A DNA stretch of 63,884 nucleotides, filler included, from Dugesia japonica (taxonomy: Eukaryota), in assembly GCA_001938525.1 (NCBI GenBank). It is 6 parts of 6 records of this genome, joined end to end, with 100 filler letters (N's around TTAATTAATTAA, not from the genome) between each part and the next. Parts side by side here need not be neighbours in the genome. Positions count along the whole stretch, not along the records: positions 23,484 to 32,578 come from MQRL01562475.1; 5 more parts are not named here. The stretch is one strand, 5' to 3'. Of the stretch, positions 23,331 through 32,578 are shown piece by piece. Every line of letters starts with the position of its first letter. Within the stretch, counting starts at the first letter, position 1. Made by a program: the position numbers and the translations under genes. The notes beneath the pieces are model-generated. The model saw nothing but the letters and a program-made list of their open reading frames with translations, had not been told where the DNA came from and did no database searches.

Positions 23331-25744
23331 GGTCAAATATTTACTTAATTGTTCCAATTCTGATATATATATATATATATATANNNNNNNNNNNNNNNNN
23401 NNNNNNNNNNNNNNNNNNNNNNNNNNNTTAATTAATTAANNNNNNNNNNNNNNNNNNNNNNNNNNNNNNNNNNNNNNNNNNNNTATTATTAATAATATAT
23501 TTTATAATAATATTATAAAATTTTATTATATTATATATTATTTTATATTATTATTTATTATAATAATCCCAATATAAAATAGACCCAATGCAAAAGAGCT
23601 TTAAAAAAATAATAGAAATACAATAATATAAAATGTAATAATATAATATAAATAATAATAAATAATAATATAATATATAATATAAATTATATATTATTAT
23701 ATAATATATTATTAATAATAGAATATTTTATATTATATATTTATTAATAATATAAAATTTAATTAAATAAAATAATATATCAATAATAATAATAACAAAA
23801 ATAAAATTTTTGATGGGGCTATTTTGACGGTCACTAGTTAATGGGACAGTTATTAAATTTTCCCTTAATTTAGTAATTTTTCCCTAAATTTAGTATAATT
23901 TCCCTTATTTTAGTAAAATTTTCCTTAGTTTAGTAATTTTTCAATTGGTTAAGTTTATTTTAAAATTATTTCCATTTATAATAATTTCATTTAATTTATC
24001 GTAAATTATTTTATTATTCCATAAAGTTAATTATTAAACAATAAATTTATTCAATATTTTGATTATTGTTTGAATTAATTGTGAAGCTTCCACATTGTTG
24101 AAAAATGAAACTAATTTATTTAGAATATTTTTAATTCTCTACAATTGATTTTCTTTTTAATATGAATCAATTATATTAGTTTTAAATTATTCTTATTTGT
24201 TTTCCATTGTTTAGTATACACTATTTTTTTAATTTTATGATAGTTTTGTTACCTTGGCAATAATAATATGTTTAAATTATTACTTTGGTTGGGTTCTGTT
24301 CCAACAAATCTTTTCCCTTCCAGTGAATGATTCCGTTCCGGAATTAGACTTGAATAATTTCTGTTATTTCCTAACAAGAAAGATATAAACAATGTAAATA
24401 ATTTTTTATTAATTTTTTAACACTTATTTATATCTACATTAGCTTGTACGGTACTCACGTCTCTGTGATGTTGGTTTCCACTTTATTTCCCAATTCGAAG
24501 CTTGTTTTTCTGTTGTTTACGGAATTATTGTCATTCTTGATTTGCTTTGCTACATATTCATCTACATGTTTTATAATCTTTCGTTTGCTTTCAACGTGTT
24601 CTTGTAATCATCTCATTCATCGTAGTTTTACATCCAATATGAAATTTATTGTTTTTAACTGCGTGTTATGCGTCTCGAGTATCGAGTTCATTGAAGCCAG
24701 TCGTTTGTTATTCATCTTCAGTGTCTGAGTTACTTCGATCACCTTCTCTATTTTCTTGCATACACTTTGACAAACGCTGTTCTAGGTGGCTGCATTTTTC
24801 TCTAGGATTTGTCCTACTTTTACAAATTATTGACTCTTAACGTTTAAGAATTCATTTTGAATTTCCATACGATTTCTTTGTTTGTTGTTGACTTGCCTTT
24901 TTTGATTAGAATGATAAATGATAAAAGAAAAATAAAATTTGTTTTTTCATGGCCATAGCAACTGCAGTAATTATATTTTCGAGTTGATCTATCTTTCAGT
25001 TTGACTTGGGATTCTTGATTCGATCTTTCTTCTTTATTGAACTGGTGTTCTGGTAGTCCTTTGTAATGACTTTAAATTTTCCTTCTTCAGTTATAAATAT
25101 ACTTAACAATTGTATTGCGCATTTATTTTCCTTTTAAAAGTTTTTTGTAACCACTTTCCCACTTCTCTTTGTTTCTTTTCTATTTTTGGATTAACCATAA
25201 TTGATCCGTTAGTTTTAAAATTTCTTGTAACTTTGTCGTTGTTGATTCTAGCAATTTTGTTAACTGGTTCCCATTTTTATTAAGATCATCTGATTTTTCT
25301 TTCTCTTGGATTTGTAATAGTTTGGTTTTGACAACATTTGTAAATGAACTTTCATTTTGCAGAATTTGTTTTCCCAAATCTATTTTCAAATGACTTACAT
25401 GCTTCATATTTGGTCAGCTATGTCTAACTTGTACTATTATATCCATAACTGTACAAGTTCGATAGAATCCGTTTCTTTAATGATCTGCCAAAAAGATATA
25501 TCTCGCTTGGTTTTGCGAATTTCTGTCCCTTCTGAGTTGTCTGATGCTTTTTTTTTGCTTCATTGCGTCCGCAACGTTAAACTAGCAATCTCCTGTTTGT
25601 ATCACTAAATGTTTAGTAATCTGATTGGACCCGAGTACCCTTATGTTAAACGGTTTTATTTCTTGGTCCAATAAACTTTCTCCTTGGTTAAAGGTTAACT
25701 TTTCCAGAAGTATTTAATGTGACTCAGCTCACAATGGATTTAGT

Positions 25745-26600
25745 AAGGCGACCAATGTTTCATTGAATTTGACAAAAAAAATAATTTATCCAGCACTTTT
25801 CAGAATGAATGACGAGAAGAATAAGTTCATAAAGAAAGTTACAAAGCATTTTGATGTATTGAGAGTAAAGAAAAATTAAAGAATCATATTAGTAGTTGCT
25901 TTTATCGATAATGAACTTCGAGAAAATTTTGAAAATGAAGATTAAGCACTGTGATTAGAAGAATGATTATTAAATTCTTTCAACACACCTACATCAATGT
26001 CAAGAGACATCGAAGAAACTTTAAATTACCGGGAAAATTGGGGTCATGTTAGCATAAGTAGAAAGAAAATAGATACAATAGTATACAATTCACTATTGAA
26101 ATCAGAGAGAATTAATGAAGAAGTTAATACCGAATGGTTGTAATGACAAATAGGAAAAAAATTTAAATCAAGTCGAGATTTTCAAAACACTTAAAAATTA
26201 GGAGAACATAGTAGAAGAAGTGAAAATCGAATTGCAATGCCGTATAATACCACAAAGATTATATAAATAGAGTATTAGAACAAAAACACGTGAATAATGA
26301 TAGTGCAGAAAGAACACATCAAATAATAAATAAAGGAAAACAAAAGATAGCGTGTTTGATCTCTATGAAGAAGAATTCGCTAAGAAAAGAGGAATAATGC
26401 TACAAATTTTAATCAGAACAATATTTGATATGAGACTGTTATAAAGTCAATTTTTAAAGATAGAGCAAAAAAGAAGACCATGAGTTGAGTCACTATACAA
26501 ATTTGAATATGCAAGGAAAATGCCAAAATGAGCAAGAATATTTCAAAGAATTTGGCTATGGAAAATAGAAATATTAACAGAATCATACGCGGAATAACAG
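25745..26600 (+). pseudogene. Highly decayed LTR-retrotransposon gag-like remnant
   Basis: GGCGACC PBS-like motif followed by KFIKKVTKHF, resembling the gag at 61874-62200. Many stops. Confidence 0.3.
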
Positions 26601-27439
26601 AAGACATTGGATATATGATATTACAATGACAATATACCAGGCCACTTAGAATAATTAGAGATTAATTTGTTTTATTCGTCTTATCTGTATACCTTGTAAG
26701 TATTTAATTTTTTCTATTTTATAAAAATATATTCTACATTTCACATATTTTCATTCATAACAATAACCAAATTACAGCGATTAAGACGCTAAAAAAATAA
26801 TTTTATTGCTATGAATTGCCAAAATTTGAATAATTCTCTCAAAGGTTGCGCCACTAGGCAGGTCTCAAACTAAACCAATGAGTAATCAGTAAAATAATGA
26901 TTATGAAAATACTGGAGTAGGTGGATGTGAGCGCACAAACACAGTAGGTGTTACCAAGCCCCCGGGGGGGGAGTGTTTGAATTTGTGTTTGATTTTGTGT
27001 TTGATTTCATTGGTCGGTTTTTAATTGGATGCGGGGAGATGTAGTTTTGTTTTGAAATTGTTAAATGTTTGCCGGGAAATTTAAAAATTATTTTTATTTG
27101 CGCGATTGATTAAAACAAAAAATTAATTTTTTTAGCAAGGATTACTGTGTTTGCGCGCTCACGTCAACAGTATAAAAGTTACTAGCCATCTTGGATTTAA
27201 GAATTTTTTGATTGGATTTCTGATCAGATCAGATATTTGATCGGATCAGATTTTGATTGTTGATTCTTTCTTTCCTTTTCTTTTCTCTTTTCTTTTCTTT
27301 TGAAAATCTTTTTAATAATTTATTCTATCCCTTTATGAATAATCCACGATAACATGTGGCACAAAATCAAACACACGGTTATCAGTTATCGAGCCCCCCC
27401 GAAAGGGAGGTGTGTTTGAATTTGTGTTCTTCTTTTTTT

Positions 27440-28790
27440 TAAAAAAAGTTCATAAAGTGTAGAACATTTTATAAAAAGAAATCATTACAGTAGAACTTTT
27501 TATAAAAAAGATTCATTACAGTGGAACATTTTAAAAAAAATAATTCATTACAGTGAAACTTTTTTAAAAAATAATTCATTACAGTGAAATTTTTATTAAA
27601 AAAGTTCAGAGTGGAGTCTTTGTGATATTTACATGATAAAATATTTAAATTAAAACTTTTCTTTACAAGATGATAAAAACAGAACTTTCTTCATAAAAAA
27701 ACATTAACTAGGTAATTTTCTATGAAAAATATATTACTAATGACAATTTTCTATAAAAAACATTTAGGTCATGCAATTTCTTTATAAAACACTTATTAGT
27801 CATGCAATTTTCAATAAAAAGTCTCATTAGTGTCGCAATTTTTAATAGAAAATCTTATTAGCGATACAATTTTTNATAAAAAATCTCATTAGCGATGTAA
27901 TTTTTCATTAAAAAAACAAATTGACAATGCAATTTTCCAAAATAAAACGTATTGGTGATACAATTTTCTTATAAAGAACATATTGGTGCTGCAATTTGTC
28001 TATAAAAGACATTAACCATACAATCTTTCTAAAAAAAACATATTAACCATGCAATCCTTCTATAAAACATATTGGTGATGCAATTTTTCTATAATAAACA
28101 CATATGTAGTGACAATTTTCTATACATAATGATAAAAACTTAGAGCTTTTTCATAAAAAATATATTAGCTGTGAGCCTTTCTATACAACTTGATAAAAGC
28201 ATAGAAAATTTCCATATATATAGCTAATAGGCCTATATAAAAAAGACTTATAAGTAAATATTTTGATATCTAAATAGGATTTATAAGTGTATAAGGTTTA
28301 AGAGTGAAGAGGGTTAAAGAAGGAAGAGGGTTTATGAGTGTATTTTTGCATAGGTACCTTGTATTATTTACATAGCAATTTACATTAATAGATTTTTGAG
28401 AGTTACAATTTCCATATATATAACTAAAGATTTCTTTAAAAATACCTTAAAGGCCTATATAAAACTTAAAAGTAAATGTTGTTATAACTATATATGGTTT
28501 ATGACTATATTGTTTACATAGTAACCCAGTATTATACGGTTTATGAGTGTATTATTTACATAGTAACCATGTAATATAGGGTTTTTGTTTGTATTATTTA
28601 CATAACAACCACGAATTATATGGTTTATGAAGGTATTATTTGCATAGGTACCTTGTAGTATAGGGTTTATTTAAATAATTCAGATAATAAATCATAGTTA
28701 CTATGTTTTATTGACATAGCAACCGTTTTATATAAGGTTTATGAGTGTATTATTTACATAGCATATTATATTATAAGATTTATGAGTGTG
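27440..28790. repeat. Three minisatellite arrays inside the mini-Polinton
   Basis: About 31-bp TTCATTACAGTG units (27450-27610), about 31-bp TGCAATTTTCTATAAA units (27700-28200) and about 46-bp GGTTTATGAGTGTATTATTTACATAG units (28330-28790). Confidence 0.75.
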
Positions 28791-28857
28791 GGAACGTAAA
28801 AATTATTTAATTTAAAAGCTTAGATCAAAATTTGGTTTTATTTATTGATATTGGATA

Positions 28858-28965
28858 ACAATTCAATATTTCGACCTTGTCGTCGCCAGGAATTGACTTT
28901 TTGACTAAATTGAATTGACTAAAATGTCAGTTCCTGATGAAGACAAGGTCAAAATATCGAATTAT
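28858..28965. repeat. Inverted pair of hammerhead-like motifs (PLE-type hairpin)
   Basis: Plus strand: agttc-CTGATGA-a-GAC(aag)GTC-aAAA-TA-TC-gaatt. Minus strand: caattc-CTGgCGA-c-GAC(aag)GTC-GAAA-TA-TT-gaattg. Confidence 0.65.
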
Positions 28966-30170
28966 TTCCTGCTTTAAGACTGGTAAAATATGTCCCTTTA
29001 TGCGTAAATTAGTTCTCAACAGGAAAACTAGTAATACTAGAACTAAAATATTTTAATATACAAGGATATATGGATAATATTACTTCCGATTTATTTAATT
29101 TGATTGAAAAAGCTTAGAAAAATTCCAACACAGATGCAATACAAGTACAACTCAAGTACAAATAATAACAATTTAAATTTGGATATTTAAATTTCAAATA
29201 ATTAAATATATTACGTTGTGGTATTTTGTTTTAATATATAATATAATGCAATCATTATTAATTCTATTTTCAAATATTTACTAAAAAAAATCATGACTAA
29301 AAATTTAAACCGAATTTATGAAGAAGAAGAAATACACATTTTAACAGAAGATGAAATCAAGGAAGTGGAGGTCTTTTTATGACGACAAGAATAATTTTTA
29401 TTTATTTTTTATTATTATCTAATATTGTTTATTTTTAGTTATTTTAAAGGAGATTCTGGAAGAGATGTTTCCATGTCTCAAGGCACTTTCTGAGCCATGG
29501 AAACATACATATTGGGAAAATATGAGCAACATATTGGAAATGAACATAAAAAGACTAATTCTCGATTCGAGACAACAATGGCCTTCATGCGTGGAAATTT
29601 CCGACGAATACGTCAAAATGCTTATAAGAAAACATTTATGAAATTCTTTTTATCGAAATAATGATAATGAAGAAGATGAGAATGATAAAATAGTCCTCTT
29701 TAGGGCTACAAATTCTGTTTGAAAATNGTTTTTTTAATTTTTACCAATAGAAAAATACATTTTATGTTGATTATTAAAATTTAATTTTTTTTGTAGTGTT
29801 TATATTTTTGGAGGCTCGATAATACCTACTATGTTTGTGCGCTCACATCTACTTACTTACTGGATTGTGAGAAATGGTGCCCCAAAGGAATACTCGTGGA
29901 TATACTTTTGAATTTAAAGTTTTTAAAGAGATGTCAGATTCATAGCGATTAAGAATTACATTACAAAGCTAGTACTAGAGATTGAATGCGAAGACAAATA
30001 TGCAGTTATACATAAGGTTGAAGTAAATTCATGAAAGTGTTCAGAAGGCAAAAAACCTTTTAAAATTCTAATTTTTAGTGATTTTTTATTGTAACACAAC
30101 TCTAAAAATACTTTTATTAAATATAAATATTTAAACAAAATTCAACAACATTACAAAAATAAATGTAACA

Positions 30171-31536
30171 TCAATATTTATCTTTAGATTTAGACTTCGA
30201 AACACGTTTTCGGTCACTTCTTTCTGAGCTTGATGAACTTTTATCACGATTAGTCGAATGCGATGATTTAGTACTTCTTGATTTACTTTTAGATCTTGAT
30301 CTTGATCTACTTCTTGATTTATTATAAGTTCTAGGAGATCTTCTTTGATATCCTCTTTTTCTACTTCTATCTTCTTCTACTCTTATATATGAAGTTTGAC
30401 CCTAGAAAATTAAGAAAATAAAGGTAATAATGAATAGGAAAAAGCAGATTAAAGTTAACAACTAGATATTTACTTGTAATTTCTAATAAATTATCTTGAT
30501 AACAATGAAAGTTTACATCTAACCACGTATAATTTAAGTAAAAGAATATTTCATTACCCCAATTCATTAAAACTTTTCCGAAATTATTGCCAATTTAAAA
30601 TGAATTACTACGTTTCCATTATTTAGTAAAAAAACTTAAATCTCCCGAGAAATATTCGTTATTAAAGTAAATAGTATATTCTATACAAAAAAATATTCAC
30701 ACATAAAATTCTTATTAAATGTTATTTAAAAATCTAATAACAAAAAAAAAACATTGCAGTAATATAAAATATCAATTTTCAAAAAACAATATTAATTAAA
30801 GATAATTATGAATTGCTTACCGAAACTGTTTTGAATTTAACATTGTTGACATGTTTTAAAACGTATTTAAAATCTTCTTTAGACACAAAATCACAAACAC
30901 CAGTTCCATTTCCAAACACATCGGCATAGCTAACATCTCCATACCGTCTCATGAAATCTTTTACGTCTTGCCAATTAGAATACGGTGGTATATTTGAAAT
31001 TAAAACCCGATAATCAGTACTTTTAGGAGGTCTTGGTCGTCGGTTTTGGTATGCATAATTCGGATAATTATTATTATTGTTATTATTATTTCGCCGGTAA
31101 TCACCATAATACGAAAATCTGTCTTGCCTGGGAAATGGACCATAATTAAATGGTACGTACATATCATATGGATCAAAAGGTGGTACGTATAATGGATTAT
31201 CATATCTAGGATATTCTTTATAATCTTTCTTGTTTTGTTTAATTTCTCTCGGAAATTCAACTCGTAATGAAAAGCCATCCAAGTCATAATTATCTCTTTC
31301 TCTAATAGCATCTTCAGCATCTCTTAAATCCAATATGAAATTGAGATTCAAAAATAATAAATTTAATTAATAATTTACCTTCGATCATCAAACTGAATAA
31401 AAGCGAATGGGGGACCATTTCTATTTTTAATATCAATATCTATTATTTTACCAAAGCAACTAAATAATTTTTCCACATCCCTTGATGTAGTATCCGGCGG
31501 TAAGTTACCAACATAAATCTTTCGTTCATTTGACAT
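30171..31536 (-). CDS. SRSF1: SR splicing factor SRSF1/SRSF9-like, about 296 aa, 3 exons (31536-31379, 31322-30821, 30401-30171)
   Basis: RRM1 [37 protein letters not shown]. Pseudo-RRM2 [20 protein letters not shown] tail [13 protein letters not shown] introns of 56 and 419 bp keep the frame. Confidence 0.93.
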
Positions 31537-32307
31537 TATCTAAATGATGAAATATTTCTTATTTTAAATTTTAAATTATATCGATTATAGATTAAAAGTA
31601 TTTTCAAATATATTTTTAGCAATTTTTCAAACTCAATATGTTTCTAATCTGAATAGTAAATTAGCCTTTGAAAGCATATTAAAAAAATATTAAATTTAAT
31701 ATTTTAAGTCAAATTATTTGAATAAATAATTATGATTATTTACTTTATTATTGAATATATTAATAATATAAAGTTGGTAGTACGGAAAGAAATATAAATT
31801 ATTTTGTTAAAACCGCAATGCTCACCCAATTTAGTGATTTGAGTTTTGCGAATATTCCTTAAGATTAGGCAATTCATAGCAATAAAATCATTTTCATTGC
31901 TTCATCGCAATAATTTTGTTACCGTTATCAATTGTTTTATTATCATATACATTACCAAAGCTGGACAGTTAAATTTCATGTATATATATATATAAAATTC
32001 GTTTTACAATGCTTGTGGTTATGCAAAGTTTTTCGTTGTTCCATTGTTTGTGTAGATATATAGATTGCTTGGTTTGTCGATTCTAGGACACATAACATAC
32101 AATTGTCCATGTGAGAAGCAATCCGTCAAACTTTAAAAGCTATCGGTGAAAATTTTTTAAAGTATTTTGATGTTGAACAAATGAACATTTACATTTTTAT
32201 TTTTATAAATAATGTAGGCATATTAAAATATAANNNNNNNNNNNNNNNNNNNNNNNNNNNNNNNNNNNNNNNNNNNNNNNNNNTATATATATATATATAT
32301 ATATATA

Positions 32308-32578
32308 CAATACGCAAAAAAATTCTGATCACTTCCAAAATAAGACAAAAATCTTGAAACAATTTATTAAAAATAAATTTTAAAATTTGGTTGGCATTCC
32401 GTCATTGTTAATAACAGCTTGGTATCTGTGTGACATGCTTTTAACAAGGTTAGTGAGAAAAATTGTTGGTATGTTTAACCCCACAACTTCTAAAATTAGA
32501 AATGATTCATTTTCATTTTGTGGATTTCTGTCAGTCTCTTGTTTATCCAGAAAAATCCATACGTTTTCAATAGGATTA
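32308..32578 (-). mobile_element. Tc1 transposon 3' end
   Basis: NPIENVW..TNLVKSMSHRYQAVINNDGMPTKF* (32578-32379). TIR-like CAATACGCAAAAAAATTCTGATCAC follows a (TA)n run. Confidence 0.8.

What the first reader, a model, noticed from the sequence alone, without database searches (positions are those of the whole stretch)
26910..29863. Complete 2.9-kb non-coding mini-Polinton with a perfect 6-bp TSD
Seen: ~45-bp TIRs starting AGTA, an exact TACTGG duplication on both sides, and no Polinton gene inside (minisatellites, an E2F-like motif, a hammerhead hairpin, at most a weak small ORF). A TTATCGAGCCCC motif (27386, and inverted at about 29811) is shared with the lineage B terminal repeat (about 42302). 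Known: Polinton integrases make 5-6-bp TSDs, and Polinton ends begin with AG-rich short repeats. Inference: a MITE-like satellite mobilised in trans by Polinton pPolB/INT and possibly packaged in Polinton capsids.
Basis: partly seen in the sequence, partly recalled or inferred. Interest (0 to 1): 0.8.

Follow-up and report, generated by a model that had tools for sequence, protein, structure and literature searches.

The report
Gene-less inverted-repeat transposon, 6-bp duplication
This is an old, structurally complete 2.9-kb mobile DNA element with no recognisable gene, sitting between two host genes; its ends fit a Polinton/Maverick-type insertion, but that link could not be proven, so for now it is an ordinary non-autonomous transposon.

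Summary
The element spans 26916-29857 (2942 bp). It has 48-nt terminal inverted repeats (41/48 complementary) and an exact TACTGG duplication on both flanks. Only a 6-bp duplication fits, and chance gives about 8e-4. No ORF matches any Pfam family. The one plausible small ORF has no real relative among 1.84 billion representative proteins. About a third of the interior is degenerate 31-bp and 42-bp minisatellite. The "hammerhead" is a strong plain hairpin with no Rfam hammerhead match, and the "E2F" site is part of an internal inverted copy of the terminal motif.

The Polinton reading is only partly supported. The 6-bp duplication and the 5'-AG start fit Polinton/Maverick. The 48-nt repeats are far shorter than the hundreds of bases usual for Polintons, and 6-bp duplications also occur in hAT6 and IS3EU/GingerRoot. 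Copy number, an autonomous partner and an empty site could not be tested, because the host (an unidentified AT-rich, compact metazoan) is absent from every DNA collection on hand. All terminal-motif hits elsewhere were chance.

All seven mismatches between the two arms are transitions, which points to an old, probably inert copy. Verdict: a real non-autonomous TIR transposon, superfamily unproven (Polinton-type about 0.45), modest interest.

The parts
26910..26915 (.). left target-site duplication TACTGG
   Evidence: exact 6/6 match with 29858-29863; no other k from 2 to 12 fits
26916..26963 (+). left terminal inverted repeat (48 nt, starts AG, 54% GC in a 26% GC element)
26973..27007 (+). 12-bp subterminal repeat, 2.9 copies
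27144..27166 (-). internal inverted copy of the terminal core motif. It is not a second element end: the outermost 8 nt are not kept and there is no TSD next to it
   Evidence: sequence read
27358..27428 (+). 70-nt palindrome. The arms are the 12-bp repeat motif in both orientations; the centre resembles the inner TIR plus a GC hairpin
   Evidence: DNA fold z -3.05
27435..27608 (+). 31-bp minisatellite, 5.6 copies, 80% matches
27693..28124 (+). related 29-31-bp minisatellite, about 13 copies, 72% matches
28290..28790 (+). degenerate 42-bp repeat region (TRF core 28490-28670, 4.3 copies)
   Evidence: (families D2, D3, D9, D11, D12)
28857..28966 (.). strong internal hairpin (46-nt arms, 83% complementary, 18-nt loop); not a hammerhead
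29294..29641 (+). weak possible two-exon ORF (29294-29371 and 29450-29641; weak donor site); no relatives, probably not a gene
29810..29857 (-). right terminal inverted repeat (48 nt, ends CT)
29858..29863 (.). right target-site duplication TACTGG

Best explanation
A non-autonomous class II (TIR) mobile element, 2942 bp, was inserted once into the intergenic DNA about 230 bp beyond the poly(A) signal of an SRSF1-like gene. The enzyme that inserted it cut the target TACTGG with a 6-bp stagger, and repair of the gaps made the duplication (shown). The element encodes nothing recognisable, so any movement had to be catalysed in trans (inferred). The 48-nt ends are the likely protein-binding sites, together with one internal inverted copy and one partial internal copy of their motifs (inferred). 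Among known enzymes, the 6-bp stagger combined with ends starting AG fits best the retroviral-like integrase of Polinton/Maverick elements, so the most likely reading is a short gene-less derivative or hitch-hiker of a Polinton (inferred). The seven transition mismatches between the arms and the decayed minisatellites suggest an old, now immobile copy.
For: TIR and TSD geometry and their significance. No Pfam domain in any ORF. The only plausible ORF has no relatives: the word search found none, and the full HMMER search found one artefactual hit to a repeat protein, with BLASTP E=2.7. Copies of the terminal motif lie inside the left part. The literature gives Polintons a 6-bp TSD and termini printed as 5'-AG...TC-3' (PMC6839031, PMC8969392, PMC10045372). 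The rival 6-bp superfamily IS3EU/GingerRoot has TA..TA termini (PMC10045372, PMC6839031), and shifting the boundary to TA..TA destroys the TSD (read).
Against: The TIRs are 48 nt and nothing is alike beyond them, whereas Polinton TIRs are typically hundreds of nt (584 bp in Anolis, 744 bp in C. elegans; PMC3014272, bioRxiv 10.1101/2024.01.15.575659). An AG start has a 1 in 16 prior. No Polinton gene remnant lies inside or nearby in the piece. No second copy or partner was seen, although none could have been seen. Subterminal motif copies in both orientations are more typical of cut-and-paste transposase binding sites.
Confidence: 0.45

Rival explanations
1. A non-autonomous hAT element of the hAT6 group, moved by cut-and-paste by a hAT transposase that makes 6-bp duplications.
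For: hAT6 families with 6-bp TSDs exist in animals (PMC12730594). The short TIRs, the 2.9-kb size and the subterminal copies of the terminal motif in both orientations are typical of non-autonomous cut-and-paste elements.
Against: The ends do not show the terminal motif usually reported for hAT elements (my own knowledge, not tested with a tool). 48 nt is long for hAT TIRs. No hAT-like ORF remnant is present.
Confidence: 0.2
2. A non-autonomous IS3EU/GingerRoot element, moved by an integrase-related DDE transposase that makes a 6-bp TSD.
For: This group has a 6-bp TSD and TIRs longer than 30 bp (PMC10045372, PMC12730594, PMC6839031).
Against: Complete families are reported to have TA..TA termini. 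Here the ends are AG..CT, and moving the boundary to the nearest TA..TA gives unlike flanks, CTGGAG and CTTACT.
Confidence: 0.07
3. A non-autonomous member of another or an undescribed DDE superfamily that happens to make 6-bp duplications, for example a MULE, whose TSDs range from 4 to 10 bp.
For: The MuDR/IS256 group is reported to make TSDs of 4 to 10 bp (PMC10045372). One copy cannot fix the family's TSD length. No partner is known.
Against: Nothing positive points to this, and 6 bp is unusual for those groups.
Confidence: 0.23
4. Not a mobile element: a chance inverted repeat, or a local inverted duplication with a fortuitous 6-bp flank match.
For: Only a single copy was seen, and the genome is AT-rich with many low-complexity inverted repeats.
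Against: The arms are GC-rich and unique, with 0 of 100 shuffles giving a match. The exact 6-bp repeat abuts both arm ends and has P about 8e-4.
Confidence: 0.05

Closest known systems
Polinton/Maverick elements and their deletion derivatives
   Same: A 6-bp target-site duplication, terminal inverted repeats, and ends beginning 5'-AG.
   Different: The TIRs are 48 nt rather than hundreds. The element is 2.9 kb rather than 15-25 kb. It has no pPolB, integrase, protease, ATPase or capsid gene, nor any remnant of one. No shared sequence with any Polinton was shown.
hAT6 group of hAT transposons (non-autonomous members)
   Same: A 6-bp TSD, short TIRs, repeated subterminal motifs and a size of a few kb.
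   Different: The ends do not look hAT-like, and there is no transposase remnant. The assignment is untested.
IS3EU/GingerRoot
   Same: A 6-bp TSD and TIRs of tens of nt or more.
   Different: The reported TA..TA termini are absent.
MITE-like and satellite-bearing non-autonomous DNA transposons in general
   Same: It has no genes. Its TIRs and TSD are intact. The interior is filled with tandem repeats and a hairpin. It lies close to genes.
   Different: At 2.9 kb it is larger than a classical MITE, and its copy number is unknown.

Membership tests
Polinton/Maverick | 6-bp target-site duplication | tested here: met
   TACTGG on both flanks, exact only at k=6; feature from PMC8969392 and PMC10045372
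Polinton/Maverick | Termini 5'-AG...TC-3' as printed in the literature | tested here: inconclusive
   The element starts AG and ends CT, the inverted complement. PMC6839031 prints AG...TC, and it is unclear whether that means the complement. The prior for AG is 1 in 16.
Polinton/Maverick | Long TIRs (hundreds of nt) | tested here: not met
   48 nt, with no similarity beyond; compare 584 bp (PMC3014272) and 744 bp (10.1101/2024.01.15.575659)
Polinton/Maverick | Encodes protein-primed PolB and retroviral-like integrase (required by definition for autonomous members) | tested here: not met
   No Pfam hit in any ORF of 45 aa or more. It could therefore only be a non-autonomous derivative.
Polinton/Maverick | Termini shared with an autonomous Polinton of the same genome | not testable with these tools
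   The host genome is in none of the collections. Terminal-motif scans gave only chance hits.
hAT (hAT6 group) | 6-bp TSD | tested here: met
   PMC12730594
hAT (hAT6 group) | hAT-type terminal motif and a hAT transposase partner | not tested
   The motif is known to me only from memory, and no partner can be searched. No hAT domain lies in the element.
IS3EU/GingerRoot | TA..TA termini with a 6-bp TSD | tested here: not met
   The ends are AG..CT, and a TA..TA boundary gives non-matching flanks; feature from PMC10045372 and PMC6839031
Ginger1/Ginger2 | 4-bp (or 5-bp) TSD and TGTNR termini | tested here: not met
   PMC2836005
Hammerhead ribozyme (for the internal hairpin) | Match to Rfam hammerhead covariance models | tested here: not met
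   No hammerhead hit at E<=1. The only hit is MIR1861 at 32.4 bits against a gathering score of 88.

The most novel reading that the evidence does not exclude
The element is a gene-less satellite of a resident Polinton/Maverick: its 48-nt ends are recognised by the helper's integrase (and perhaps its protein-primed polymerase), so it spreads at the helper's expense and might travel in the helper's capsids.
Probability: 0.2. Interest if true: 0.6.

Novelty: new member of a known kind. Interest (0 to 1): 0.3.

Why it matters
Short gene-less derivatives of Polintons are hardly described in the searchable literature: one search found no paper on miniature non-autonomous Polintons, only the old view of Tlr1 as one. 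If genome-wide data tied these ends to a Polinton, the element would mark out the minimal cis-acting ends of a virus-like transposon and give an example of parasitism on it. As it stands, it is one old non-autonomous TIR element in an intergenic region, which is an ordinary feature of animal genomes.

Tried and rejected
**Searches for other copies**
- The 18-nt terminal core was scanned in three collections. Viral contigs gave 1 hit, metagenome contigs 13 and genome contigs 12. All matched the counts expected by chance and none extended beyond the core (at most 36% identity in the flanks).
- A 24-nt terminal pattern in metagenomes gave 0 hits. A 21-nt inner-TIR pattern in viral contigs gave 0 hits.
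- Exact-protein look-ups of the element ORF, the flanking 181-aa ORF and P0001 found nothing on record.
- A literature search for the terminal string found nothing.

**Coding potential**
- Pfam was run on every ORF of the element.
- Exon 2 of the weak ORF was tested by word search, viral tblastn and the full representative HMMER search. The single hit, P0007, is a 1277-aa repeat protein matched in 12 weak stretches, with BLASTP E=2.7 and no Pfam domain; I rejected it.
- The AlphaFold model is one long helix plus a short one (pLDDT 72, pTM 0.40). That is too uninformative for a fold search, so none was run.
Only exon 2 went into the homology searches; both ORFs were scanned apart against Pfam, all by reference.

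**Ideas rejected**
- Hammerhead ribozyme.
- tRNA or small-RNA gene as target, as for Dada elements: no tRNA was found.
- An 8-bp or TA duplication with shifted boundaries.
- The left 250 bp as a separate nested MITE: the outermost bases are not kept and there is no TSD.
- The idea that the host is Meloidogyne (one search suggested it; one search places the flanking gene's relatives nearer flatworms, molluscs and tunicates).
- The Tc1/mariner label for 32383-32577 remains unconfirmed.

Full report
**Scope.** Only the piece 23484-32578 was used. Single N at 27875 and 29727 and the 50-N gap at 32234-32283 were left as they are.

**1. The observation.** The sequence and the repeat finder (pair I3) show inverted arms at 26916-26963 and 29810-29857, 48 nt long and 85% complementary.
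- A local alignment of the outer 700 nt of both ends gives exactly these 48 nt ungapped. Nothing beyond them exceeds shuffled controls (score 33 against a mean of 27 and a maximum of 38).
- The 26-nt terminal motif and the 21-nt inner motif each occur only at the two ends, and 0 of 100 shuffles gave any match.
- TACTGG lies directly outside both arms. Among k=2-12 only k=6 gives identical flanks. The composition-based chance is about 8e-4, and the hexamer occurs nowhere else on the + strand of the piece.
- The element is therefore 26916-29857, 2942 bp. It starts AG and ends CT. Its GC content is 26%, like its surroundings, but the arms are 44-54% GC.

**2. Anatomy.**
- *Left part.* A 12-bp repeat (26973-27007) follows the left arm. 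At 27144-27166 lies an inverted copy of the terminal core; the 15-nt core matches with one degenerate position. It lacks the outermost bases and any adjacent duplication, so it is not the end of a nested element.
- *Palindrome.* 27358-27428 is a 70-nt palindrome. Its arms are the 12-bp repeat motif in both orientations, and its centre resembles the inner TIR plus a GC hairpin (z -3.05). At the four arm-mismatch positions that this internal copy covers, it agrees with the left arm twice and with the right arm twice.
- *Minisatellites.* Next come two related arrays of about 31 bp (27435-27608 and 27693-28124) and a degenerate 42-bp repeat region (about 28290-28790). The tandem arrays scored by TRF cover 32% of the element.
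- *Hairpin.* A 46-nt-arm hairpin at 28857-28966 folds far better than shuffles (-47 kcal/mol, z -8.4). Rfam gives no hammerhead at E<=1, only a hairpin-shaped sub-threshold hit to a miRNA precursor family.
- *No RNA genes.* No tRNA was found.

**3. Coding potential.** No ORF of 45 aa or more matches Pfam above cut-off; the weak hits at E 0.007-0.03 are far below the gathering scores. The only gene-like stretch is 29294-29371 plus 29450-29641, which would need a weak GT donor. Exon 2 has no relative:
- the word search found none;
- viral contigs gave none;
- the full HMMER search of 1.84 billion representatives gave one hit, a 1277-aa repeat protein matched in 12 weak stretches, with BLASTP E=2.7, which I take as an artefact.

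The single-sequence model is just two helices. 'Non-coding' is therefore a fair description.

**4. Setting.** To the right, on the minus strand, lies a three-exon SRSF1-like gene: ATG at 31536, stop near 30172, introns of about 57 and 417 nt, two RRM domains and an RS tail. Its AATAAA lies near 30112-30117. The insertion is therefore about 230 bp downstream of the gene, in intergenic DNA that faces unidentified ORFs on the left.

The closest protein, P0001, is 89% identical and known only from UniParc. The next relatives are about 40% identical and come from flatworms, molluscs, nemerteans and tunicates. The host is an unidentified AT-rich, gene-dense metazoan that is missing from the collections. 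This explains why all searches for further copies failed. Those blanks say nothing about copy number.

**5. Mechanism.**
- *Shown:* a bounded segment with inverted ends and a 6-bp direct duplication of the target. This is the footprint of a DDE-type enzyme joining both ends to target strands 6 bp apart.
- *Inferred:* because nothing is encoded, the enzyme acted in trans, and the conserved 48-nt ends plus the internal motif copies are its binding sites.
- *Age:* all seven arm mismatches are transitions. If the arms were once identical, that is about 15% pairwise decay. An intact 6-bp duplication is still compatible with this (probability about 0.4), and so are the 70-80% identities within the minisatellites. 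The copy is probably old and inert.

**6. Which family.**

| Family | TSD | Termini / TIRs | Fit here | Sources |
|---|---|---|---|---|
| Polinton/Maverick | 6 bp | printed AG...TC; TIRs of hundreds of nt | TSD and the 5'-AG start fit; TIRs much too short | PMC8969392, PMC6839031, PMC3014272, 10.1101/2024.01.15.575659 |
| hAT6 | 6 bp | not tested here | TSD fits; ends do not look hAT-like to me (memory only) | PMC12730594 |
| IS3EU/GingerRoot | 6 bp | TA..TA | fails the terminus test | PMC10045372, PMC6839031 |
| Ginger1/Ginger2 | 4 or 5 bp | TGTNR | excluded | PMC2836005 |

The ends here fit Polinton best, but the TIRs are an order of magnitude shorter than usual and there is no sequence link to any Polinton. 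I put Polinton-type integration at about 0.45, hAT6 at 0.2, IS3EU/GingerRoot at 0.07, another or unknown superfamily at 0.23, and 'not a transposon' at 0.05. Packaging in capsids has no evidence at all.

**7. Novelty and score.** This is a non-autonomous TIR element of uncertain superfamily: a new member of a known kind. Interest is 0.3. It would rise to about 0.6 if genome-wide data tied the ends to a Polinton, because miniature gene-less Polinton derivatives are barely documented.

**8. Slips to declare.** I also weighed, position by position, which TIR arm might be older. Claims that rest on memory are marked as such.

Noticed in passing
window 30172-31536 (- strand): A three-exon SRSF1-like gene with two RRM domains and an RS tail; introns are about 57 and 417 nt. 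Its only close relative, P0001 (89% identity, UniParc only), ends in a tail that matches the non-RS frame of the last exon, so that database model is probably mis-spliced.
   Followed up: partly
window 32383-32577 (- strand), cut by the piece edge: A 65-aa open frame that looked to me like the C-terminus of a Tc1/mariner transposase (memory only). Pfam at E<=10 and PDB phmmer at E<=1 gave nothing, so this is unconfirmed.
   Followed up: partly
window 26785-26843 and 31845-31903: A 59-nt inverted repeat pair (76% complementary, with a 22-nt identical core) brackets the element plus the SRSF1-like gene. It may be two copies of a short dispersed repeat or a shared regulatory motif.
   Followed up: partly
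window 23484-24013: Extremely AT-rich low-complexity DNA (11.6% GC) with a 20-bp tandem array of 4.7 copies at 23850-23942.
   Followed up: no
window 24443-25413 (- strand) and 25718-26394 (+ strand): Runs of short open frames with opposite AT skew suggest two divergent multi-exon genes. The minus-strand one looks like a coiled coil. The frames that were scanned gave no Pfam hit, and the genes were not identified.
   Followed up: no
window 28857-28966: An internal hairpin with 46-nt arms (RNA fold z -8.4) and three TTGAC repeats in the loop region. It could be a nested foldback or a source of small RNA. No flanking duplication was seen.
   Followed up: partly
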